The notes beneath the pieces are model-generated. The model had not been told where the DNA came from and did no database searches. It saw only the letters and a list, made by a program, of their open reading frames with translations. From the NCBI GenBank assembly GCA_000388065.2, contig KB932208.1: a DNA stretch of 64,000 nt, one strand, 5' to 3'. The stretch comes from Fonticula alba ATCC 38817 (lineage: Eukaryota; Protista; Nucleariida). Below, piece after piece: positions 2,665-62,055 of this stretch. How positions within the stretch are numbered: the first letter of the stretch is position 1; the number at the start of each line of letters is the position of its first letter. The position numbers and the translations under genes were made by a program.

Positions 2665-3855
2665 TTTCACGCCCGCTCCAATGGGCTGGGGCACTTGCGC
2701 CCGCGGGCAGATGTTCGCGCCCGACAGTCACACCCCATCTTGATGTTGGGGGGGGGAGGTTGTGTAAGGTCCGCGGCCGCGTGCCCGGCGCATGTGTGCA
2801 GCCGCACTCGCCGCACCCTTGGCACCAAGACACCGTTACGGGGAGATCGCCCCCCCCCCCCCCCCCCCCCCCCCCNNNNNNNNNNNNNNNNNNNNNNNNN
2901 NNNNNNNNNNNNNNNNNNNNNNNNNNNNNNNNNNNNNNNNNNNNNNNNNNNNNNNNNNNNNNNNNNNNNNNNNNNNNNNNNNNNNNNNNNNNNNNNNNNN
3001 NNNNNNNNNNNNNNNNNNNNNNNNNNNNNNNNNNNNNNNNNNNNNNNNNNNNNNNNNNNNNNNNNNNNNNNNNNNNNNNNNNNNNNNNNNNNNNNNNNNN
3101 NNNNNNNNNNNNNNNNNNNNNNNNNNNNNNNNNNNNNNNNNNNNNNNNNNNNNNNNNNNNNNNNNNNNNNNNNNNNNNNNNNNNNNNNNNNNNNNNNNNN
3201 NNNNNNNNNNNNNNNNNNNNNNNNNNNNNNNNNNNNNNNNNNNNNNNNNNNNNNNNNNNNNNNNNNNNNNNNNNNNNNNNNNNNNNNNNNNNNNNNNNNN
3301 NNNNNNNNNNNNNNNNNNNNNNNNNNNNNNNNNNNNNNNNNNNNNNNNNNNNNNNNNNNNNNNNNNNNNNNNNNNNNNNNNNNNNNNNNNNNNNNNNNNN
3401 NNNNNNNNNNNNNNNNNNNNNNNNNNNNNNNNNNNNNNNNNNNNNNNNNNNNNNNNNNNNNNNNNNNNNNNNNNNNNNNNNNNNNNNNNNNNNNNNNNNN
3501 NNNNNNNNNNNNNNNNNNNNNNNNNNNNNNNNNNNNNNNNNNNNNNNNNNNNNNNNNNNNNNNNNNNNNNNNNNNNNNNNNNNNNNNNNNNNNNNNNNNN
3601 NNNNNNNNNNNNNNNNNNNNNNNNNNNNNNNNNNNNNNNNNNNNNNNNNNNNNNNNNNNNNNNNNNNNNNNNNNNNNNNNNNNNNNNNNNNNNNNNNNNN
3701 NNNNNNNNNNNNNNNNNNNNNNNNNNNNNNNNNNNNNNNNNNNNNNNNNNNNNNNNNNNNNNNNNNNNNNNNNNNNNNNNNNNNNNNNNNNNNNNNNNNN
3801 NNNNNNNNNNNNNNNNNNNNNNNNNNNNNNNNNNNNNNNNNNNNNNNNNNNNNNN

Positions 3856-4281
3856 NATCGCATCCCCCCCCCCACACCCGGGGCAGACCCTCAACTGCCA
3901 GCCTTTGCCCCCGGGCTCCGGCAAAAATTGCCCCCCTGCCACCTCCGCATGCGTGGTCGACCAATTAAATGCTGTCACGCCGCGCCGGTACCACCATGGC
4001 GGGATCATGAAAGCTTTGTCCCTCGCCCTCTCTCCGCCTCCGTCTCTGCCCCACATCGTGCATTCATGCACACACGTCCCCCCCCCCGCCCCCCTTCCCG
4101 CGTATGTGTGTGTGTGTGTACCGCCCCCTTGGCACCGGGGCATCGAGAGACAAGGGACCGGGCGGGGGGGGGCGGCGGCGGGTGGGCGCCCATCACTGTC
4201 CCGGTCCCCCCCCCCCCCCCTGTGCCGGGTGTAGGGAGGCCCGTTCCCGAGGGGGGAGTATATTTCCGCGGAGCGCCGTAG
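3856..4281 (+). CDS. Possible 3' exons of a small hypothetical gene, tail-to-tail with the SET gene
   Basis: Coding-like stretches (TLNCQPLPPGSGKNCPPA; GRPVPEGGVYFRGAP-stop at 4281) with poly-C before an AG. No motif recognised and the 5' part lies in a gap. Confidence 0.2.
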   Translation, partial: XRIPPPTPGADPQLPAFAPGLRQKLPPCHLRMRGRPIKCCHAAPVPPWRDHESFVPRPLSASVSAPHRAFMHTRPPPRPPSRVCVCVCTAPLAPGHRETRDRAGGGGGGWAPITVPVPPPPPVPGVGRPVPEGGVYFRGAP

Positions 4282-42323: not shown

Positions 42324-43344
42324 ATGGCCACAGCGGCCCCCGCACCGATGCCCGGGTCCGAGGTCACCCGGGAATATGCCCATCTGGACTTCCTGGACCT
42401 CGTTGAGCGGTCAGCACCATACATTTCGGTGGAGGCGCGCCCAATCGCCGAGGGGCCGACCTCACCCACGGCGGCGATGGCCCCGCCCACTGGCGGTGGC
42501 GGTGGCCCGGCCTTCACCAACATTCTGGGGCCCGTGGCGCCGCACCTGGCCGCGCTGATGGTGTCCCCGCTGAGCGCCGATCCTCGATCCCGGCACCGGG
42601 GCATTGATCGGTTCCGGCGTTTGCTCCGGGCATATCGGCCCTCGGAGGCGGAGGCGCAACAGCAGTCGCCGCAGCTGGGAGCCGCCTCGGTGCCGGGCCA
42701 GCCGTCGGGTGGGCACCCGGCCGGTCGCTTTGAGCCGGACTACTACGGCCCGGTCAGCCTCCCGGCCGGGACCTCGACCAATCACTACGCTTCGGACAAC
42801 ATGACCCTCGATGAGTGTGCGTCAAAGAGGGCCACACAGAGGGACCCGGCATCGCTGCGCACTTTGGCCGCCTCTCGTGGCGGCTGCTGTGGCTGCTCCG
42901 CCCCTGCTGTCCCCCCCCCCCCCCCCCCCCCCCCCCNNNNNNNNNNNNNNNNNNNNNNNNNNNNNNNNNNNNNNNNNNNNNNNNNNNNNNNNNNNNNNNN
43001 NNNNNNNNNNNNNNNNNNNNNCCCCCCCGGGGCCTTCCCGCTGCTGACCTTGCCTTCTCCCTCTCCCCCTCCCCCTCCCTCGGGCCGATCCGCGGCCAGA
43101 CGAGAAGTGCCGGCGCGACAGCGGCGCGGACAATACGCTCGTCTGGTTCGCCACTCCGCCGTACGACGCGGTGTCCGCGCTGTCGGGGCACATGCCGTCC
43201 GCCGAGTGGGTACACTTTTCGTCGGAGGCGGCGGCTGCTGCTGCCAGCACACCCGACTTCCTAGATGGCTGCTAGGGGCGTGGTTCCCACCCCTCGTGGG
43301 GGATGGTCCCCGCGTCTCTCGGGACTGACGAGCAGCCAATGTGA
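42324..43344 (+). CDS. Small hypothetical protein with an RDxxxxxxLxWFxxPP motif
   Basis: Exon 1 MATAAP...NMTLDE with a phase-1 GTGCGT donor. Exon 2 (from ~43100) YEKCRRDSGADNTLVWFATPPYDAVSALSGHMPSAEW. The last exon is uncertain. Confidence 0.5.
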
Positions 43345-48100: not shown

Positions 48101-48984
48101 CGCAAATTTGAATGCCCTCGGGAAAATCCGCCCGGCACGACGAGTGGCATCGGTGGGCAGCTGCGTATCACACCATGGCCCTTTGGAGCCCGGGCGAAAG
48201 TGGCATCCGGCGCGCCCAGGGCACATGCTCGCGCGTGACACGCCCCGGCGGCCTGATCAGCTCGATCGTCTCCCCGGCCCCGGCGCGATCGTCTCGTTTT
48301 TTTTTCCCTCCCCGCCCCGACGACCCGTCTCGCCGCTCCCCGGCCCCCCCCCCGGCACAGTTGCGCCTCTCCTCCCCACTGTAGTTCTCCCTCCCATTTT
48401 TTTTTATACACGCCGCCTGCGGCTGCGCCTGTCACCAGGGCGCTGCACCTCTCCTTGCACGCGTTGTTGTTGTTGTTGTTGTTTTTCCCTCGCCCCCCCC
48501 CCTGCGGGCGGCGCCGGCGGCGTTGATCTCCCAACGGATGCGATTGTGGGCGATGTGCCCGCCCCCAGTGCCGGGGTGCTGCAGCATCGGAACGTCCGGC
48601 CCTGCGGGCGCCCGCGGCTCGGTGGCGCGATGCGTGTCCACCGCGCGCCGGCCAAGGGCGGGCCAGCCAGGGGAGGGGGGGGGGGGGTGATTACTTCACC
48701 GGGTGCTGGCGGAGAGATTGCGCACCGCGCGCGGGCACGCATGCCCCCGCGCCCGGGCCCGGCCCCCGAAGGTTCGGTCAAGATCCGGCAGTGTCTTTGG
48801 CTCTTTCGGCGGCCATCTTGGTTGGCCTGGCACCTGCCGCGAGCCACGCCTCGTTGCTTCGCCGTCCCCCGCCCGCGTTGCTCCTCCATTTTCTTTTTCT
48901 TTCCTGCGCTCCTCCCCCCTCCCCCCTGTCCCGCAACCCCCCCCCCCCTCCCCCCGCCTACCCTTCTCGCCTCCCAGCATCGAC

Positions 48985-51270
48985 ATGTCGCCGGCCACGC
49001 AGCCGCCGCAGGCGTCGGAGCCCGACGCCCCCGAGGTGTGCCCCCACCTCTCGCGGGCGGTCAAGCCCAACCCCGCCAAGAGGCAAATCCCCCACATCAA
49101 GGTCTTCGCCTGCCAGGAGCCGGACTGCTCCGCGTCGGCGAGCGACCAGGGAGGCGACATCTGGGTGTGCTGCGGGTGCGCGGCCCTCCTCTGCGCCGAG
49201 CACCAGGCCCAGCATGTCCAGCCCCCGGGGCATGTCATCTTCCTGCGGACCGAGGCTCGGGCGTTGGTGGTGCGTGTGCTTGATGCGGCAAATGCGGGTC
49301 CCGGCCGCTGGGGCCCGCATCTGCCCGAGGCCTCCCCGTGCCGCGCGGGTGGCTTCTCCCTCTTCCCCTCGTCCCCGCCACGCGCATCGCCCTCCCTCCG
49401 CCGCCCCGCTGACCTCCTTGTGCCCGTGCGCCCCCCCCCCCCCCNNNNNNNNNNNNNNNNNNNNNNNNNNNNNNNNNNNNNCCCCGCCCCGCCCCGCCCC
49501 GCCTGCCATCCTCGACAGTTGACGCGGCGTGCGCGCGGCGACTCCTCCGCGCCCTGGAGCCCCGCGACGGCCTGCCCTCCGTCCGGTTCGCCTTTGCACC
49601 GCTATGCTTCGCGCTACACACCCGGCCCGATGCGATCGCCCTGCGCCGGGAGTCGCTGCATTGGCTGGTACGCATGGCCCCGCGCATAGGGCGCGCCCTT
49701 TTGGCCGACGGCGACCCGCTCCCCGGGACCCCGGGCTTCGGCCCGGAGCACGCGGCCTTTGCCGCCTGCTTCGGGCCCCTCTTCCAATGTCTGGATCATG
49801 ACACCCTCTCGGTGTCTGCCTGCGGGGTGCTCATTCATGTGGCGCGTCCGTGGCACGCCAGTGCCTGGCGCACGCGCAAGGCCCGGCAGCTGTACGATCG
49901 CCGCGGCCGACCGCGTGCCATGGCCCCGCTGGTCCAACTGCTGGAATCCTGGTCGACAAACATGCGCCTGGGGGCCGCCGGCGTGGCACTGCACCTTGGG
50001 GGAGGACCCGTGGCCGCCACCGCCACAGCAAGCCTGGTCTCGCCCTCGTCGCACAGCATCACCACTTCCTCCGGCGGCGCCATCGCCCATGTTGACAGTG
50101 CGCAGCTTTGTAGCCCCGACTGCTCTTCTTTGCGCCCCTTCCCCGGCCATCGTCCAGCTGCGACTTCTCCTCCCCCTCCTCCTCACACATCGCCACATCC
50201 TTCCCACGGACCCCCCCCCCCCCCTCCACTAGGCCTCCATCTACAGCGTGCGCGCCTTGCCCACGCGCTTTCGGCGCTTACCCTGCACGATGAGCCCCGT
50301 CAGCCGGGGGCCGCCACGACCATCGGCCTGAGCGACCTCAGCTCTGCCCTCCATACCCCGAGCGACCCGCCGCCCAATTCCTTCACTCGATCGCTGACAG
50401 CCACCGTGGACTCGGCCTCCCTACATGCCTTTGTCCAGGCCATCGACGTGCGTCGCCATGTATGCGGGTACCCCCCCCCCCCACTCCCCATGTGTCCCAC
50501 CACGCATTAACACGCCTTGCCCTCCCTCTCTCCCCCCCGCCTGCCCGCTTCCGGCGTACACCAGGACCCCTTCTGGCTGCCTGCCATTTCGGACTTCCTT
50601 TCCACATGGGATGGCTGCCGCCTCCGGCACTCGGTCTTCCGATTGATCTCCCTGTGCCCGCCAATGGCCTTCGAGGGTGCGCATATAGACCCAGTGACCT
50701 TGCCGCCCCCTTTCCCCCCCCCCACCGCCTGACACCCCTTTTAACAAAACACAAACACAAACCCCAACAACACCACCCCAACACCGCCCCCTAGAGATCT
50801 ACACCTTCATCCTCAACCCGCTGCTCCACCTCTTCCAAAGTTCGGACACCGTGTGGAAGTGCACCCTGATCAACATGTACTCGACCTTGACGTCGCGCTG
50901 GTGTGCGGTCTTCATGGCCGAGGAGTCCATGGGGCTCGGGGCTGACCGGTATTTCGGCCTGCTGGCCACCATTCGCCTACTGGCCGCACATGTGGACCGA
51001 CTTTGCCTACACTCCATCATCTCCGAGCGTGCGCATCCCCTGGTGGAGACCACAGTCCGGGGGTACTTCCTCCGGCTGTTCCAGGCCCTTGAGGGCCACG
51101 ACTCGAGCAAGTATTCCGCCCTCGAGGAGGGGCCATCCGGACTCGATGACAGCCTCGACCCGTCGAACATCCTGCTGGGGTTTTCCCCGCGGTCGCTCGT
51201 CCTCCTCTCGGCAAACCCCAGCAGTGGCATTGGCCCGCTGGACCTTTCCCTCCTGGGCGGGAGGGGCTAA
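48985..51270 (+). CDS. CENPI: CENP-I/Mis6/Ctf3 inner-kinetochore protein with an N-terminal ZnF-UBP-type zinc finger
   Basis: Exon 1: CPHL...CQEPDC...IWVCCGCAALLCAEHQAQHVQPPGHVIFL (ZnF-UBP pattern). From 49519: RLLRALEP...ESLHWLVRM...CFGPLFQCLDHDTLSVSACGVLIHVARPWHASAWRTRKARQL. Then SLHAFVQAID|DPFWLPAISDFLSTWDGCRLRHSVFRLISLCPPMAFE|EIYTFILNPLLHLFQSSDTVWKCTLINMYSTLTSRW. These are colinear with remembered CENP-I blocks (RILKCMIP, FYRWLVAM, LYGFFFASLQDDALCPYVCHLL, LWDGLCCRSQFLQLVSWIP, FKCSVL). Confidence 0.8.
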
Positions 51271-52846
51271 GGAGGAGGGGCCTGGAGCGACCCGCCGTCC
51301 CTCCCCTGCCCCCGATCGCGCGCGCCTACGCACTGGAGGCATGGGCATGCGCAGTCGGCTGGCCATCCTGGAGCTCCCCGTCCTGCCTCCCGGAAAAGGG
51401 CGTATGTGGGCTGTGTAATATACTTTTCTATTGGCGATTTCGTCCGCCCGGCCGGCCTGCCGGTGTGCATACACGATCATGAGCCATCCGAGGCGTGGTC
51501 GCCATCGGCGACATACTCCTGGCTGACATATCCTCCGGCAACCCAGTCGGACTACGTACATGGGTACGTATATACGACGCGCGTGCGTGCGTGTGTGCGT
51601 GTGTGTGTGAGTGTGAGTGTACATTCATGCGCACATGCAGGGGCATGAGAGAGACACCGCAGCGGGAATTTGTGGGACGATCCGTGCCGGTGGCACGCGG
51701 ACAACAAAAGGGAGTGACGCGTACCCAGGTGACGGCTAGCCGGACGGACGTGTCGATCGGCCCGCCAGCTGGAACCTCGTCCGGCCGCAGGCTGTCGATC
51801 GACCGGCCTGATGGCACAATCGGTGCCTCGGCCAGGCGGGCACAAAGCTTGGCATGTTGGACGGCTGCCTGCTCCAGGCGCGCAACAGCGTCCGAGAGCT
51901 CTACCAGGAGCGGGTGCGGGGGGGGNNNNNNNNNNNNNNNNNNNNNNNNNNNNNNNNNNNNNNNNNNNNNNNNNNNNNNNNNNNNNNNNNNNNNNNNNNN
52001 NNNNNNNNNNNNNNNNNNNNNNNNNNNNNNNNNNNNNNNNNNNNNNNNNNNNNNNNNNNNNNNNNNNNNNNNNNNNNNNNNNNNNNNNNNNNNNNNNNNN
52101 NNNNNNNNNNNNNNNNNNNNNNNNNNNNNNNNNNNNNNNNNNNNNNNNNNNNNNNNNNNNNNNNNNNNNNNNNNNNNNNNNNNNNNNNNNNNNNNNNNNN
52201 NNNNNNNNNNNNNNNNNNNNNNNNNNNNNNNNNNNNNNNNNNNNNNNNNNNNNNNNNNNNNNNNNNNNNNNNNNNNNNNNNNNNNNNNNNNNNNNNNNNN
52301 NNNNNNNNNNNNNNNNNNNNNNNNNNNNNNNNNNNNNNNNNNNNNNNNNNNNNNNNNNNNNNNNNNNNNNNNNNNNNNNNNNNNNNNNNNNNNNNNNNNN
52401 NNNNNNNNNNNNNNNNNNNNNNNNNNNNNNNNNNNNNNNNNNNNNNNNNNNNNNNNNNNNNNNNNNNNNNNNNNNNNNNNNNNNNNNNNNNNNNNNNNNN
52501 NNNNNNNNNNNNNNNNNNNNNNNNNNNNNNNNNNNNNNNNNNNNNNNNNNNNNNNNNNNNNNNNNNNNNNNNNNNNNNNNNNNNNNNNNNNNNNNNNNNN
52601 NNNNNNNNNNNNNNNNNNNNNNNNNNNNNNNNNNNNNNNNNNNNNNNNNNNNNNNNNNNNNNNNNNNNNNNNNNNNNNNNNNNNNNNNNNNNNNNNNNNN
52701 NNNNNNNNNNNNNNNNNNNNNNNNNNNNNNNNNNNNNNNNNNNNNNNNNNNNNNNNNNNNNNNNNNNNNNNNNNNNNNNNNNNNNNNNNNNNNNNNNNNN
52801 NNNNNNNNNNNNNNNNNNNNNNNNNNNNNNNNNNNNNNNNNNNNNC

Positions 52847-53130
52847 CCTTCCCCCCTCCCTGTCGGGCGCTTCATGCAGCCCCCTGCCAATGCGACACCC
52901 CCACCCGGCCTGCTAAACGCTAACGGCCGTATTTTGCCTGACCGCGCGGCTAACACGATGAGCCAGATGAACTCGCCTGTGGGCGGTGCCGGGCCTGGGG
53001 CCGGCGGCAACTTCCAGCTCCCTCCGGGTGCTTGGGGGCAAATGCTTCCCCCAGGTGGGAATACCGTGCCCCCCACCGGGCATGGCCTTGTCCAGGGCCA
53101 CCCTGGCAGCCTGGGTATGGGGTTGGCAGC

Positions 53131-53161
<31 letters not shown>

Positions 53162-56100
53162 GCGACAGCCCCGAGCCCCGCCCCGGGAGGCATGCAGCAC
53201 CTCGGCCCCGGCGCCTTCCCACTGGCCAGCCCGCCAGCGAGTCCCAGGCCGCTGATGAGCATGTTTGCCCGACCGGTCGCCAATCCGACCGGCCTCTTTG
53301 CCGCTGGTTCCGGCCCCGGCGTGGTCCCCCTGCTTGGAGCCATTCCCCCGGCTGGATTGGTGAATTTCCACAGCCACCACTATCAACAGCAACAGCAGCC
53401 GCCGCCGCCGCCGCCGCCGCAGCAGCAGCAGCCACAGCAGTTACTGCAGTCGGTCTCCATGCTGCCGGTGTCCAGTCCTATCACGCCAGCTGTTGCAAGT
53501 TCGCCCCTCGACAATTCCGCAGCCGCGGCAGCAGCAACAGCAGCAGCTCAAATGTCGCCTGCGCCCTCGGCGGGGCCAGCGACAGGGGCCACGGCGTTTC
53601 CCCCTGGCCCTGCCCCAGCCCACGCGTCGGCGGATCCATCACCAGCTGGGACCTCGGCCCTTGCTTCAGCTCCGGCTGTGGATCTGGCCGTGACCCCGGC
53701 CCCGGTCCCGGCCCCGGTCCCGGTCCCGGTCCCGGCCTCGATCCCGACTCCGGCCCCAGTCCCCACTCGACAATGGTGGCACCCAGTGTCGGCCGAGGCG
53801 GCGGCCACCTTCCGGGAGCACCTTGTCCAGTGGCATGCTGCCTCGCTAGTAGAGCTCGCCGGGCCTGGGCACACTGCCTCACCGGCCATCCTGGCCCGGG
53901 CGCGTGCCCTCGCGGCCGACATTGCCCTTCCCCAGACAGCCGTCACTCTGGGCCCGGGGGGTGCGACACCGGCCGCCGTTCCCCAAGTGGCCCCGCTGTC
54001 GGTCCCGCTCCTGGCGCTGGTGATCGCGGTGCAGCATTATGGCGGCGCGGACCTGGTACGTTTCTCTCTCCCCCCCCCCCCCCCCCCCCCCCCCTCGGGA
54101 CGCTTCTCCCGCCCCCCCCCCCCCCCCCCCCCTGCCGTGCGCGTGTTTCCTGACCCCCCCTCCCGCCTGTCCCTGTCTGCTGAAAGGTATCCTCCACCGG
54201 GCTCTGGCCCGTGATTGCGGTTGGCCTGGCTCTGGGCATGGACCCGGCCGACTCTGCCAACTTGAGCCTTGTGACGTCACTGACCCCGACCCCGGCGGCG
54301 GCTGCCTCTCTTGGGGCCATCATCCGCGACCGGTGGCAGCGGTCCCTGGCGCCTGTGGGCCGGCTCTCCCTGGCCGAGGCCCTGAGCGGAGCGCAGCCCC
54401 TGCTGAACCTTGCCCGGCCCGGGGCGTTGCTGCTCGGCCGGGAGGAGACCGCGCATCTGGAGGTCCCCGCACCGCCTGTCAATTGCGGGGCCGGGGTCTG
54501 GCTCGAGCGGACCCAGGCCCTGCGCTACGCCATGGCCAACCCTCGGGACCGGTCGACGCCGGCCAGCATGGACGGGGCCTTCGCCGTGGAGTGGCGTGCC
54601 CAGGAAGAGGCGGCCGCATGGGGTGCGTCCATGGCATCCCCCCCCCCCCCGCCGCCGCCCGAACTCCAGTCCCATTCCTCTGTCGCTGCTGGCCTTGCAG
54701 TCGGCTGTCAACTAACCTCTGCCTGTCTCGAAGCCGCTCTCGGTCCGCGAACGCTGGTGGCCACGCGCCTGCGCATGGCACTCAAGTCGCGGCTATTTAA
54801 CGAGGTGACCTGGGCCCTGCAGGGTCTCCTGCGTCTGGCCTCGGTGGCTCCAGCCAACTGTTCGTTGACGACATGCCTTGCCCCCTCCCCCGACCCATCT
54901 TCCTTTTGCCCCCCCTTCCATGGGGGCCAGCGCCCTGCACATGTGCCTGTACTGACCGGGCCCGTGCCCCCTCCCCCCCCCCTTTTTTTTACTCCTCGAC
55001 GCTTAGCTCTCACCTCGTCCATCCGCTTGGCGGACCTCTTGGAGCCCATTTGCGTGGTCGGCGGCCTGCGCCTGGCCGTCTCGGATGCCGCATCTTCCGG
55101 TATGCACAAGCCCCCCCTCCCCCGCCCCGTCGATGGGCCGCGCCATGTACCTTGCCTCGGCTAACCTCCATGGGTCCTGTGCCCCCGCCCCTTCCCCCCC
55201 TGTGACCGCCGACTGGCAGCTCCCCTTTCGCGGGTGACGCTTCTGTCGGCCCGAGTGCTGGCCACCCTGGCCATGTCGGACCCGGCGCTGGTGGCCGGCA
55301 GCCGGCTGGCCGTGCGGGCATTGTTGGAACTGACCGACCTCGGCTGGGACGCCCAGGAGCCGGTACCTGGTGCCAACGCCGGCTCGGACACCGTTTCACC
55401 CACGACCTCGGCTTGGAGCGCGGCCTGGCTGGAGGTGCCGCTCGGCTTGTCGGACCGGGTGGCGGCGGCGGCGGCCGGGCGTGCCGGCCTCCTGGCACTG
55501 GTGAGCAGCGGGCACCCGATCGCCACCACGCCGGGGGACCACCGGCCGCCGGCCGCGACTACCGTGGCGGCCGTTCCCGCCGCGGGCGGTGCAGCCGCAC
55601 CGGCCCCCCCCGCTGCCAGCAAGCGCCTCCTCCCGTTGGTGGCCCAGCGGCGGCGGCGGCGGCGGCAGGCGCTTGCGGCGGGAACGGCCACCACCCAGGC
55701 TGGCGCGTCAGCCGAGCCGGGCGGCCGGGCTGGTGGCTCGCAGGATGCCGTGTCTCCGCCCCTGTCGCCCACTTCGCCAGCCCCGCCGGCCGACGATGCG
55801 GGGCCCGATGTCCCGGGTCTTTGTCCGATCCTGGTGCGTGTGGCTCATGCGATTGGTGCCCTGCGGCGGGTGGTCCGGGTCCGGGCCCGGGGCTCGGCCA
55901 AGCGGCCGGGCATTTCCTGCGGGGCTGAGCGCGACCATCACTTTGTCATGTGCGGCCCTGCGTCGCGCGACCGGGCCATTCTCCTGTGGGCGGTGGATGT
56001 GCTCGGCTGGCGGGCGGTCCATTCCGACGGAGACCTCCTGGATGCCGGAGTGTGGGGCCTGTCGGCAACCCACGCGCGGCGCTTTGACCGTGCGGCTGCC

Positions 56101-57026
56101 GGCTTTGTTTGCGCCCCGTCGGTCTGCCTGCCGGCCGGGGCCAGCCCCCCATCGGCCAACCCGAGTTTGGCCGATGGGTCAGACCCCGGGGCCGTTCGGC
56201 ACATGGTCCACGCGGGCGATGTTGCGCGCTTCCTTGGCGAGACGGCCCTCTCGGCGGCCAGCTGTGGGCGTTTCCCGCCCCCCCCCCCGCCCTGCTGTGT
56301 CTGTGCCCGATTCTTGGGTGCCCAGTTATTTGATTGACCACGGGATGCACTTACACACATGCTCCGGCCCCTCCCTCCCTCCCTCCCTCCCTCCCCACCC
56401 TCTCTCTCCCCGCCTCGCCACAGGATATGGGCCTGGTAGTGGCATGCTTGGCGACGATCAACCGCGCGGTGGCTCGCGGGCCACTGGCTGCCTCGGCCAT
56501 CATCGATACTCCCCTGTTCCAGGGCCCGGCGAGTGGCCTGGCCCCCGGCGGGGCTCCGGCCGCCGTGCTGCCCCTCAAGCAGCTCCTGGCATCAGGCACT
56601 ACCGCGCGCGAGGCGGGCCTGGATGGGCTGCTGGACGCCCTGTTCGCCGGGCCCCAGAGTCCCGCGGGCCAAGGGCTCCCCCCACCGGCCAAGGTGACCC
56701 TGGCAAGCTCGCTCTTGCGCTTGATGGAGGATGCGCAGCTTCATCTGAATACGCTGGACCAGCCGCGGCCGGTGTCGAGCGCGCCCGCGGTGGCCGCGGT
56801 GGCCGATGGCAAGGAGCTCATGCAGCGTCTGGTGCAGATGTCGGAGCCTGACGACGTGGCACATGGTGCCCCGATGCAGCCGCTGGTCACGGTGTCGGAG
56901 TCCCGCGACATTCGATGGCTCTCTCTCATGTGCGCACCTCTCTTTGCCTGTTTCCCTCGGTCTCGCCTGGGTTCGCCGCGGCCACCACCACCTGCTTCCC
57001 CTCCTTTCGCTGCTCTCCCTCCCTCT

Positions 57027-57073
<47 letters not shown>

Positions 57074-57591
57074 CCGCCCCCCTCTCCCGGCCAGCCATCG
57101 GCATTGGCGTACTCACACAGCGTGGCATTCACTCGCAGGGTCGCGCGCGTGGCCCGGCCCTGCCCTCGGTCTTCGCTCCCTTTGGCGGAGCTCTCCTCGC
57201 GGCTGATCACCCTGGTTGCCGGGCGCCTGGCTGCACTTGAGCAGCTCATCAACCAAGCCGAGGCCAACCCGTCCATGATGACCGGGACCCGTCTTACGCA
57301 CCTTCGTGCCCTCAGAGACGCGCTGCAGCGGCGCATCACTTTCACAACCTCCACCCCACACATCTCCGAAGCGGTGGCCCTTCTGTTGCCGGGGACCACG
57401 CTCGTGAACACCGGGCATTCCGAGGTCCTCCCGCCCGGCATTCCAGGCTTCCTGCATTTGGCCCTGCTGCCGGATGCCGAGCCCCTGGCTGAAGACGCGT
57501 GCGCAACCTTCTTTCTTTGCCCTCCCTTTCCATCGCCCCCCCCCCCTTCTTCCTCTATGTCTCCCTTTTCCCCTCTTCGGGCAGCGCCCTT

Positions 57592-57622
<31 letters not shown>

Positions 57623-58724
57623 GCACTCATCCACGCCCCCCCACAGACTGGTCAATGCCATCGAGGCCGCAGAGCTGGCGCAGCTTCCCGGCGTGCCATC
57701 GGCCGGGGCGCTTGCCTGCCCACTGGCGGCGGCGCGCACCTGCGACCAGAGCCGCCTCTCGCAGTCGGCCATGGCCGCACATCTGGCTACGGCCCATGGC
57801 CCGGGCAGCGGAGACCCCAAGGCCGGATCGCTCTGCGGCTGGAACGGCCAATGCCGGGCGGCAGTCCCATCGGCCGACCAGTGGCAGGCGCATCTGGCTG
57901 AGCACTATGAGTTGCCGGTGTCGGCCGATGCCCTGGCAGGCATGGCAATTGCCTTTGCCTCTCCGGACGGCTGTGCTCTCGGGGCCTCGCAGGTCGATCC
58001 TGGCCGCGCTAGCGACTGGTGCTTGCTGTATCCGCCATCCTTGTCGCGTGCGTTCCCCTCTCCTCCTCCTCCTCCTCCTCCTCCTCCAGCCACCTTCCTG
58101 CCACCTTCCTGCCACCTTCCTGCCGCGGCTGCCCCTTGCATTATGCACGCCCACCGGCTCCTCTTCCGGCTTTCTCTCTCTCTCCCCCTCTATTTCTTTA
58201 CTCCCCCTCCTGGTGCGCTGCTCTGACATACCTGGGGCCATGCTTCTCGGCCATGTACAGCCACGGCCTACCTAGCGGCGTGTATTCTGTACACGGCGTC
58301 TCGTCACGCGGATTCGCGGGCCGTGCACCAGGCGGCCGGTCCGTCACCCGCCGCCGGCACCGGAGCGGGTCTCTTCCATCAGCGCATGCGCCGGGCGGCC
58401 ACGCGCGCAGGCGCCGGGGCGGCCGGCCGGTCGCGCAGCACCGCCACGGCCCTGGTGTCGACACCGCTGGGCGGCGTGGCAGCCGTCCATGGCTCGCGTC
58501 TTCCTCGGCGGGTTGGGTCTTCGCAGGTGGCCCTCCCTCGGCGTGGTGACGCCCCGGGGGCCGGTTTGGCCGTCGACCGGCTGTATGAGCTGGCCACCGG
58601 GAGCTATTGCGCCCCCTCCGGCGTGCAGGTGAAGCTCCCGCCGGTGCAATCTTACGCGTGTGAGATTGCCGCCGCCCTGGCCGTCGCCCCCTCGTCGGCG
58701 GCCGCCGCGCAAATGAATGACTAG
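52847..58724 (+). CDS. ARID-domain SWI/SNF-family chromatin remodeller subunit (ARID2/Rsc9-like: ARID, ARM repeats, two C2H2 fingers); 5' end in or before the gap
   Basis: The ARID is split at 54055|54187: FREHLVQWH...PQV...LLALVIAVQHYGGADL|VSSTGLWPVIAVGLALG...AIIRDRWQRSLAP. RLRMALKSRLFNEVTWALQGLLRLAS matches the ARID1/ARID2/Rsc9 SLKSGLxxExxWAL block. CPLAAARTCDQ...HLATAH and CGWNGQC...HLAEH are C2H2-like. Stop at 58724. Confidence 0.8.
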
Positions 58725-61529: not shown

Positions 61530-62055
61530 CGGNNNNNNNNNNNNNNNNNNNNNNNNNNNNNNNNNNNNNNNNNNNNNNNNNNNNNNNNNNNNNNNNNNNN
61601 NNNNNNNNNNNNNNNNNNNNNNNNNNNNNNNNNNNNNNNNNNNNNNNNNNNNNNNNNNNNNNNNNNNNNNNNNNNNNNNNNNNNNNNNNNNNNNNNNNNN
61701 NNNNNNNNNNNNNNNNNNNNNNNNNNNNNNNNNNNNNNNNNNNNNNNNNNNNNNNNNNNNNNNNNNNNNNNNNNNNNNNNNNNNNNNNNNNNNNNNNNNN
61801 NNNNNNNNNNNNNNNNNNNNNNNNNNNNNNNNNNNNNNNNNNNNNNNNNNNNNNNNNNNNNNNNNNNNNNNNNNNNNNNNNNNNNNNNNNNNNNNNNNNN
61901 NNNNNNNNNNNNNNNNNNNNNNNNNNNNNNNNNNNNNNNNNNNNNNNNNNNNNNNNNNNNNNNNNNNNNNNNNNNNNNNNNNNNNNNNNNNNNNNNNNNN
62001 NNNNNNNNNNNNNNNNNNNNNNNNNNNNNNNNNNNNNNNNNNNNNNNNNNNNNNN

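What the first reader, a model, noticed from the sequence alone, without database searches (positions are those of the whole stretch)
48985..51270. Ubiquitin-binding-type zinc finger (ZnF-UBP) apparently fused to kinetochore protein CENP-I/Mis6
Seen: exon 1 carries an almost complete ZnF-UBP cysteine/histidine pattern. The CENP-I-like frame at 49519 begins right after an AG acceptor (CTCGACAG) and has no ATG of its own before the first conserved block. Two routes join them: a phase-1 donor at 49349 fits the acceptor directly, or the canonical phase-0 GTGCGT donor at 49270 splices to a micro-exon hidden in the 49445-49481 gap, which could supply the missing xCYxC end of the finger. Established: ZnF-UBP domains (USP5, HDAC6, BRAP) bind the free C-terminal diglycine of ubiquitin, and CENP-I is a HEAT-like CCAN subunit. 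I know of no CENP-I carrying this domain. Inference: a lineage-specific inner-kinetochore subunit that may read ubiquitin or UBL signals.
Basis: partly seen in the sequence, partly recalled or inferred. Interest (0 to 1): 0.8.

Follow-up and report, generated by a model that had tools for sequence, protein, structure and literature searches.

The report
Zinc finger possibly fused to CENP-I
A Fonticula alba kinetochore gene (CENP-I) sits just downstream of an exon encoding a ubiquitin-hydrolase-type zinc finger, but RNA shows that the exon or exons between them are missing from the assembly, so the fusion is plausible but unproven.

Summary
Both halves are real. Exon 1 (48985-49269) encodes a divergent ZnF-UBP-like finger. 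It scores below the Pfam cut-off, but its Cys/His pattern and its nearest database look-alikes agree. From 49519 the gene encodes a CENP-I/Mis6 orthologue: Pfam is above cut-off, the top fold matches are human CENP-I, and 27 homologues were found.

The locus is the public gene H696_04799 of Fonticula alba, which already models the fusion. RNA contigs contradict its junction (donor 49274 to acceptor 49518). Exon 1 ends at the GTGCGT donor at 49270 and continues into letters absent from the window. These read DLAHCTECDA in frame, which is the missing CxxC of the finger. Contigs entering the CENP-I exon at 49519 carry 192-247 upstream letters that are also absent from the window.

So the gap written as 37 N hides at least about 250-300 nt of exon. 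No contig links the two sides. I put a true fusion at about 55% and two separate genes at about 35%.

None of 27 other CENP-I proteins carries the finger. Five of the six HDAC6 residues that hold ubiquitin's C-terminus are not conserved, so ubiquitin reading is doubtful.

The scan noted this same stretch once more from an overlapping window (s1-065645).

The parts
48741..48790 (+). First exon of the public model H696_04799 (MPPRPGPAPEGSVKIR), joined to 48978. It is not supported here.
   Evidence: The public protein is rebuilt exactly from exons 48741-48790, 48978-49273, 49519-50097, 50233-50447, 50565-50675 and 50794-51270. The only RNA match is 25 GC-rich letters of an unrelated-looking contig.
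48985..49269 (+). Exon 1: ATG plus 95 codons, the N-terminal four fifths of a ZnF-UBP-like three-zinc finger.
   Evidence: Translation. Pfam zf-UBP profile 1-44/63 at 19.6-21.4 bits. Alignments to the HDAC6 and USP16 fingers. In the Atlas, 67 of 100 nearest clusters are zf-UBP. RNA contigs cover 49090-49270 and 49131-49270.
49270..49444 (+). 5' part of the intron after exon 1. Its donor GTGCGT matches the gene's other donors.
   Evidence: Contigs leave the window at 49269/49270. RNA depth is zero over 49288-49509 in all four runs. Donor strings are compared.
49445..49481 (.). Assembly gap written as 37 N. It must hide the intron's end, at least about 250-300 nt of exon, and the start of the next intron.
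   Evidence: Loose ends of 24 and 50 nt lie after 49270, and 192-247 unplaced letters lie before 49518. The 30 visible letters are absent from the whole window. All 16 gaps in the window have estimated lengths, and most sit at G or C homopolymers.
49482..49518 (+). 3' end of the intron before the first visible CENP-I exon, with AG at 49517-49518.
   Evidence: Three contigs from three runs begin at 49518 with no mismatches.
49519..50097 (+). CENP-I exon covering helices 2 onward of the N-terminal HEAT domain and a low-complexity linker. It enters in phase 1.
   Evidence: Contigs and the 50097/50233 joint. Collinear block P0001 189-269 matches homologues. pLDDT is 75-95 for residues 110-265. VIA aligns model 82-305 to human CENP-I 68-283.
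50098..50232 (+). Intron, GT..AG, 135 nt.
   Evidence: The joint is seen in all four runs.
50233..50447 (+). CENP-I exon (linker).
   Evidence: Contigs and the exon model.
50448..50564 (+). Intron, GT..AG, 117 nt.
   Evidence: The joint is seen in all four runs.
50565..50675 (+). CENP-I exon: start of the conserved C-terminal HEAT domain (the WDG motif region).
   Evidence: Pfam CENP-I hit at P0001 392-457. W395 and G397 are invariant or nearly invariant among 28 sequences.
50676..50793 (+). Intron, GT..AG, 118 nt.
   Evidence: The joint is seen in all four runs.
50794..51270 (+). Last coding exon: the rest of the C-terminal HEAT domain and the stop TAA at 51268-51270.
   Evidence: Contigs. 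VIA aligns model 373-526 to human CENP-I 422-615 with Z 16.8 and rmsd 3.4.
51271..51436 (+). 3' UTR.
   Evidence: Contigs of three runs end at 51435-51436.

Best explanation
One gene (public locus H696_04799 of Fonticula alba) encodes the organism's CENP-I/Mis6 orthologue with a ZnF-UBP-like three-zinc finger at its N-terminus. The middle of the mRNA is missing from the assembly. Exon 1 splices from the GTGCGT donor at 49270 to one or more exons hidden in the gap at 49445-49481. These hidden exons supply the last CxxC of the finger, a linker and the first HEAT hairpin of CENP-I, and then splice in phase 1 to 49519.

The CENP-I part is a shortened two-domain HEAT scaffold that should sit in the inner kinetochore (CCAN) with CENP-H/K-type partners.

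The finger lacks most residues that hold the free Gly-Gly end of ubiquitin. It more likely acts as a zinc-stabilised protein-protein contact module, as in the non-ubiquitin-binding ZnF-UBPs of Ubp8/USP22 or Sad1/USP39, than as a ubiquitin reader.

Shown: both domains, the splice sites, and the existence of hidden exon sequence on both sides. Inferred: that the two hidden stretches belong to one mRNA, and the function of the finger.
For: - Exon 1 and its continuation. The contigs run on in frame as DLAHCTECDA, completing a 12-ligand Cys/His pattern. With these letters added, the Pfam zf-UBP alignment extends from profile 1-44 to 1-55 of 63.
- The donor. The 49270 donor GTGCGT matches the three other donors of the CENP-I exons, GTGCG[TC].
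- The CENP-I side. Contigs entering at 49519 carry 192-247 unplaced upstream letters. These are not exon 1, because X1 and X2 have zero depth there.
- What is missing. Structure alignment places window residue 117 at about human CENP-I residue 100. The first HEAT hairpin is therefore missing from the window and fits in those 82 or more codons.
- Size. The 50 nt from the left and 247 nt from the right fit a single hidden exon of about 270-300 nt.
- Strand and spacing. Both flanks of the gap are C-rich on the + strand, like this gene's introns. The neighbouring genes called on the scaffold lie 3.6 kb and 1.7 kb away. A complete 3' end, intergenic spacer and promoter inside a gap estimated at 37 nt is therefore less likely than one exon.
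- Depth. RNA depth rises steadily 5' to 3' along the gene, and exon 1 continues that trend.
Against: - No contig or joint links exon 1 to the CENP-I exons.
- Exon 1 has depth 0, 0, 3.4 and 2.9 in the four runs, against 4.3-9.5 for the contigs entering 49519.
- Two independent contigs end 244 and 247 nt upstream of 49518. That could be a transcription start of a separate CENP-I mRNA.
- In some homologues, CENP-I starts close to the position matching 49519. P0008 and P0002 show offsets of 109-111 residues.
- None of 27 CENP-I homologues has a zf-UBP domain.
- The gap estimate of 37 nt is wrong under either model, so it constrains little.
- The finger is below the Pfam cut-off, and its single-sequence AlphaFold model is uninformative (pLDDT 44.8).
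Confidence: 0.55

Rival explanations
1. There are two neighbouring genes on the same strand. One is a small or larger ZnF-UBP gene whose remaining exons and 3' end lie in the gap. The other is an ordinary CENP-I gene whose promoter, start codon and first exon also lie in the gap. The public fused model would then be an annotation artefact made by bridging the gap in frame.
For: - RNA contradicts the public junction (donor 49274).
- No contig links the two sides.
- Exon 1 depth is two- to three-fold lower than the CENP-I exons, or zero.
- Contig ends coincide at 244 and 247 nt upstream of 49518 in two samples.
- The 82 hidden codons are about what is needed for a complete CENP-I N-terminus; homologues have 5-100 residues there.
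- No other CENP-I carries the finger.
Against: - The gap would have to hold a terminal exon, 3' UTR, spacer, promoter and first exon. That is about 0.7-2 kb against an estimate of 37 nt.
- Local gene spacing is 1.7-3.6 kb.
- A ZnF-UBP at the extreme N-terminus normally precedes a USP catalytic domain of 350 aa or more (general knowledge), which would need still more hidden DNA.
- The depth difference also fits ordinary 3' bias.
Confidence: 0.35
2. The scaffold join is wrong, or the hidden exons lie elsewhere in the genome. Exon 1 and the CENP-I exons would then not be neighbours at all. Alternatively, exon 1 belongs to a minor alternative-start isoform, and most CENP-I mRNA starts inside the hidden region.
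For: - Sixteen gaps lie in 64 kb, mostly at G or C homopolymers, which shows a fragile assembly.
- The missing letters are nowhere in the window.
- The depth step between exon 1 and the rest fits a minor isoform.
Against: - Both flanks look like + strand introns of the same gene type, and the donor consensus is shared.
- Scaffold joins based on read pairs are usually right (general knowledge).
- Nothing here points to another location.
Confidence: 0.1

Closest known systems
CENP-I / Mis6 / Ctf3 (Pfam PF07778), inner-kinetochore CCAN subunit
   Same: - Pfam hit above the gathering score (31.7 against 23 bits).
- Two collinear conserved blocks.
- The top four Foldseek PDB hits are human CENP-I chains.
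- VIA aligns model 99-528 to human 91-613, and the C-terminal domain scores Z 16.8.
   Different: - About 460 visible residues, against 650-770 in most homologues.
- The region after the conserved C-terminal block is about 120 residues, against 240-290.
- There are long low-complexity linkers.
- The first HEAT hairpin is not in the assembly.
- There may be a zinc finger at the N-terminus, which 27 homologues lack.
Three-zinc ZnF-UBP fingers of HDAC6 and USP16 (Pfam PF02148)
   Same: The ligand order and spacing are shared: CxH ... C..C ... WxCxxC ... C ... H...H ... H ... CxxC. The CPHL start, the W before the third Cys pair and the Asp after the last CxxC are also shared. These two fingers are the best PDB sequence matches.
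   Different: - The score is below the Pfam cut-off.
- The second pair is CxxxxC.
- The GRY(V) loop carrying R1155/Y1156 of HDAC6 is absent.
- W1182, Y1184 and Y1189 correspond to H, T and a non-Tyr codon (residue roles from bioRxiv 10.1101/268557).
- The loop before the last CxxC is four residues longer than I count in the human HDAC6 sequence as I recall it.
Non-ubiquitin-binding ZnF-UBP modules of Ubp8/USP22 and Sad1/USP39 (from my own knowledge, not tested here)
   Same: They share the fold type and an N-terminal position. They have lost the diglycine pocket residues and serve as assembly contacts within a larger complex.
   Different: Those proteins carry a USP catalytic or pseudo-catalytic domain after the finger. 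Here the partner would be a HEAT scaffold.
Public gene model H696_04799 (Fonticula alba, 575 aa, hypothetical protein)
   Same: It is the same locus. Its exons from 49519 on are identical to the RNA-supported ones, and it already joins the finger to CENP-I.
   Different: - Its junction (donor 49274, giving ..ALVV-L-DAAC..) is not the one RNA uses.
- It lacks the hidden exon or exons, at least 83-99 residues.
- Its first exon, 48741-48790, has no RNA support in these runs.

Membership tests
CENP-I / Mis6 (PF07778) | Pfam profile score above the gathering cut-off | tested here: met
   31.7 bits against a cut-off of 23, E 9.5e-8, residues 392-457 on profile 437-502 of 515. Only the C-terminal part of the profile is matched.
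CENP-I / Mis6 (PF07778) | Nearest relatives in sequence space are CENP-I proteins | tested here: met
   36 phmmer hits at E of 1e-3 or less in 1.84 billion representatives. Of the 28 aligned sequences, 27 carry PF07778: the query and 26 of its 27 hits, with best E 6e-72. Named sources include Mis6-domain proteins of Dimargaris and Halteromyces.
CENP-I / Mis6 (PF07778) | Two HEAT/ARM-like domains that superpose on solved CENP-I | tested here: met
   Foldseek ranks 1-4 are human CENP-I, E 1.4e-7 to 1.4e-5. VIA gives Z 16.8 for model 373-526 against 422-615, and Z 12.4-13 for the N-domain against 7pb4_I, 5z07 and 5z08. Generic ARM proteins score Z 11-12, so only the C-domain match stands clearly above background.
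CENP-I / Mis6 (PF07778) | Complete N-terminal HEAT domain, including the first hairpin | tested here: inconclusive
   Window residue 117 corresponds to about human residue 100. Model residues 82-115, which fill the first hairpin, are the mis-joined finger at pLDDT 45-51. The true hairpin is probably in the hidden 82 or more codons.
CENP-I / Mis6 (PF07778) | Kinetochore localisation and binding to CENP-H/K | not testable with these tools
   This needs microscopy or pull-downs.
ZnF-UBP (PF02148) | Pfam profile score above the gathering cut-off | tested here: not met
   19.6-21.4 bits against 22.7 for exon 1 alone, and 20.0 bits with the RNA-derived tail. The domain is truncated in the window and its last residues are unknown, so this is a near miss, not an exclusion.
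ZnF-UBP (PF02148) | Twelve Cys/His zinc ligands in the canonical order | tested here: met
   Ten ligands are in exon 1 and two are in the RNA tail (HCTEC). The ligand assignment comes from the alignment to HDAC6 and USP16 and from my knowledge of the fold.
ZnF-UBP (PF02148) | ZnF-UBP fold | tested here: inconclusive
   The single-sequence AlphaFold2 model has pLDDT 44.8. In the full-length model the region has pLDDT 28-50. Atlas feature search: 67 of 100 nearest clusters are zf-UBP, top score 0.93 with 192 shared features.
ZnF-UBP, ubiquitin C-terminus-binding subtype (HDAC6, USP5) | Pocket residues equivalent to HDAC6 W1143, R1155, Y1156, W1182, Y1184 and Y1189 | tested here: not met
   Only the W1143 equivalent (IWVCC) is kept. 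R1155 and Y1156 fall in an alignment gap. W1182 reads H and Y1184 reads T. The Y1189 position has a codon starting with C, which cannot be Tyr. Residue roles come from bioRxiv 10.1101/268557.

The most novel reading that the evidence does not exclude
Fonticula alba builds its inner kinetochore with a CENP-I that carries a degenerate ZnF-UBP finger at its N-terminus. This domain combination is absent from 27 other CENP-I proteins found here. It would add a zinc-dependent docking surface to the CCAN, for an unknown partner or possibly a ubiquitin-like C-terminus read through a remodelled pocket.
Probability: 0.5. Interest if true: 0.55.

Novelty: new variant of a known kind. Interest (0 to 1): 0.4.

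Why it matters
CENP-I is a conserved scaffold with no known accessory domains. In animals its stability at centromeres is controlled by SUMO and ubiquitin pathways (SENP6/RNF4; my own knowledge, not checked here). A lineage in which CENP-I itself carries a ubiquitin-system domain would be a natural experiment on that link. It would also be a marker for kinetochore evolution at the base of the fungal lineage.

The practical result is that the public model of this gene is wrong at its central junction and lacks at least 83-99 residues. Any comparative study that uses it inherits a fusion that has not been shown.

Tried and rejected
Neither is seen in any contig. Contigs leave the window at 49269/49270.
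- Recovering the hidden letters as proteins called on RNA contigs. A 100-aa query from 49521 and the finger region of P0001 found nothing beyond the public protein.
- Looking for the 30 visible hidden letters in the window with up to 3 mismatches, and in JGI metagenome contigs. No matches.
- Pfam on single exons of the CENP-I part. No hit at E below 1. Only the spliced protein scores.
- Fold test of the finger by single-sequence AlphaFold2. pLDDT was 44.8, which is unusable.
- Literature. No paper holds Fonticula with CENP-I and kinetochore, or CENP-I with zf-UBP. The two papers with Fonticula alba and kinetochore are unrelated.
- Earlier scan notes. They only repeat the same first-reader note.
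- A start at the internal ATG 49674. Rejected as the main start, because it would delete helices 118-178, which are modelled at pLDDT 61-88 (mostly above 80) and align to human CENP-I.

Full report
**What is there.** The window is a GC-rich (62-76%) eukaryotic stretch. The region matches one public protein, H696_04799 of Fonticula alba (P0001, 575 aa, named hypothetical protein). The tool shows 85% identity only because my query read through an intron. I rebuilt that protein exactly from window exons 48741-48790, 48978-49273, 49519-50097, 50233-50447, 50565-50675 and 50794-51270. That model bridges the assembly gap at 49445-49481 with an intron running from a donor at 49274 to the acceptor at 49518.

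**The finger.** The ATG at 48985 opens 95 codons. They carry CPH, C-x4-C, W-x-C-x-x-C, C, H-x3-H and H in the order of a three-zinc ZnF-UBP.
- Pfam zf-UBP aligns profile positions 1-44 of 63 at 19.6-21.4 bits (E 1e-3 to 3e-4). This is just under the 22.7-bit cut-off.
- The only PDB sequence matches to exon 1 are the ZnF-UBPs of HDAC6 (E 0.13) and USP16 (E 2.8), with the ligands in register.
- In the ESM Atlas feature search, 67 of the 100 nearest clusters are zf-UBP, with a top score of 0.93 and 192 shared features.
- phmmer against 1.84 billion representatives found no significant relative of this region, so the finger is very divergent.
- A single-sequence AlphaFold2 model was unusable (pLDDT 44.8).

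I call it ZnF-UBP-like: probable, but sub-threshold.

**The CENP-I part.** The evidence here is firm.
- On the spliced protein, Pfam CENP-I scores 31.7 bits against a cut-off of 23.
- phmmer gave 36 hits. Of the 28 sequences I aligned, 27 carry PF07778. The sources are early-diverging fungi (Cunninghamella, Basidiobolus, Dimargaris, Calcarisporiella, Halteromyces) and Diphylleia.
- Two blocks are collinear with homologues and with human CENP-I: P0001 189-269 and 374-509.
- An AlphaFold2 model built on that alignment is confident for residues 110-265 and 380-520.
- Its four best Foldseek PDB matches are human CENP-I chains, E 1.4e-7 to 1.4e-5.
- VIA aligns model 99-528 to human 91-613. The C-terminal domain scores Z 16.8 at rmsd 3.4.
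- The protein is short compared with homologues, especially after the conserved C-terminal block.

**The RNA evidence.** Four RNA runs from two samples of the organism hold the locus as assembled contigs.
- They confirm three GT..AG introns (50098-50232, 50448-50564, 50676-50793), the stop at 51270 and a 3' end near 51436.
- Depth is zero over 49288-49509.
- Two contigs cover exon 1 (49090-49270 in X3 and 49131-49270 in X4). They then run on for 24 and 50 letters that are unlike the window.
- The first 30 of those letters, read in phase after ..ALV, give D-L-A-H-C-T-E-C-D-A. This is the missing last CxxC of the finger, followed by the Asp typical of the family.
- With these ten residues added, the Pfam alignment extends to profile position 55 of 63. 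The score does not rise (20.0 bits), because the loop is longer.
- The donor used is therefore GTGCGT at 49270. It matches the GTGCG[TC] of the three other donors, whereas the public donor at 49274 does not.
- On the other side, three contigs (X1, X2, X3) start on the window exactly at 49518 and carry 192, 244 and 247 further upstream letters that lie nowhere on 48400-49517. They cannot be exon 1, because X1 and X2 have no depth on exon 1.
- The tool masks 49482-49512 as a repeat. An unspliced contig would still have matched 49513-49517, so the break at the AG is a splice.
- The 30 visible hidden letters are absent from the whole window.

The gap's 37 N therefore hide at least about 250-300 nt of exon plus intron ends, and the two sides of the gap are not continuous in the mRNA.

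**What the hidden part probably holds.** By sequence and structure, window residue 117 (the first codon at 49521) corresponds to about residue 100 of human CENP-I. The first HEAT hairpin (human about 60-100) has no true counterpart in the window. In the model that place is filled by the mis-joined finger at pLDDT 45-51. The 82 or more hidden codons before 49519 fit that hairpin plus a tail or linker.

**Fusion or two genes.** No contig joins the two sides, so the central claim stays open.

For one gene:
- The 50 nt from the left and 247 nt from the right fit a single exon of about 270-300 nt.
- Both gap flanks look like + strand introns.
- The donor consensus is shared.
- Neighbouring called genes lie 3.6 kb and 1.7 kb away. 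A full 3' end, spacer and promoter inside this gap would be unusual.
- An N-terminal ZnF-UBP normally precedes a large USP domain, which would need still more hidden DNA (my knowledge).

For two genes:
- Exon 1 depth is 0, 0, 3.4 and 2.9, against 4.3-9.5 for the contigs entering 49519.
- Two independent contigs end 244 and 247 nt upstream of the junction, as a transcription start would produce.
- The 82 codons are about enough for a complete CENP-I N-terminus. In two homologues the protein starts almost where 49519 does.
- None of 27 CENP-I homologues has the finger.

I put the fusion at 0.55, two genes at 0.35, and a misjoin or minor-isoform scenario at 0.1.

**Function of the finger.** In HDAC6 the free Gly-Gly end of ubiquitin is held by R1155, Y1156, Y1184 and Y1189, and stacks on W1143 and W1182 (bioRxiv 10.1101/268557). 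Here only the W1143 equivalent survives.
- The GRY(V) loop falls in an alignment gap.
- The W-C-Y positions read H-C-T.
- The Y1189 position has a codon beginning with C, which cannot encode Tyr.

The domain therefore probably does not read free ubiquitin ends. If fused, it more likely serves as a zinc-stabilised contact module, as in Ubp8/USP22 or Sad1/USP39 (my knowledge, untested here).

**Verdict.** The fusion rests on an annotation junction that RNA contradicts, and it remains unproven. If true, it is a new domain architecture for a known kinetochore subunit. If false, it is an ordinary CENP-I next to an ordinary zinc-finger gene, separated by a badly assembled stretch.

Noticed in passing
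window 712-62976 (16 gaps; e.g. 2876-3856, 42937-43021, 61533-62055): There are sixteen assembly gaps of 10-981 N in 64 kb. Most are flanked by long G or C homopolymer runs, so gene models that cross gaps in this genome deserve the same RNA check.
   Followed up: partly
window 48742-48766 and 51441-51461: In all four RNA runs, one contig of up to 1045-1430 nt matches only these two short GC-rich stretches (25 and 21 nt, one mismatch each), with 263 other letters between them. The two stretches bracket the public gene model almost exactly. This is probably a chance match of CCCGGCC-type low complexity, but it is unexplained.
   Followed up: no
window 48741-48790: The public model's first exon (MPPRPGPAPEGSVKIR) and its intron 48791-48977 have no support from these RNA contigs. 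The start codon may be the ATG at 48985.
   Followed up: partly
window 51575-51625: A GT/GTGC microsatellite lies just past the 3' end of the gene. The read tool masks it as a repeat.
   Followed up: no
window 52958-58724 (L001 12218-17984): The next gene downstream encodes a 1489-aa product with no Pfam hit on record. It has long Ala, Gln and Pro runs and begins just after a 920-N gap, so its 5' end may also be mis-modelled.
   Followed up: no
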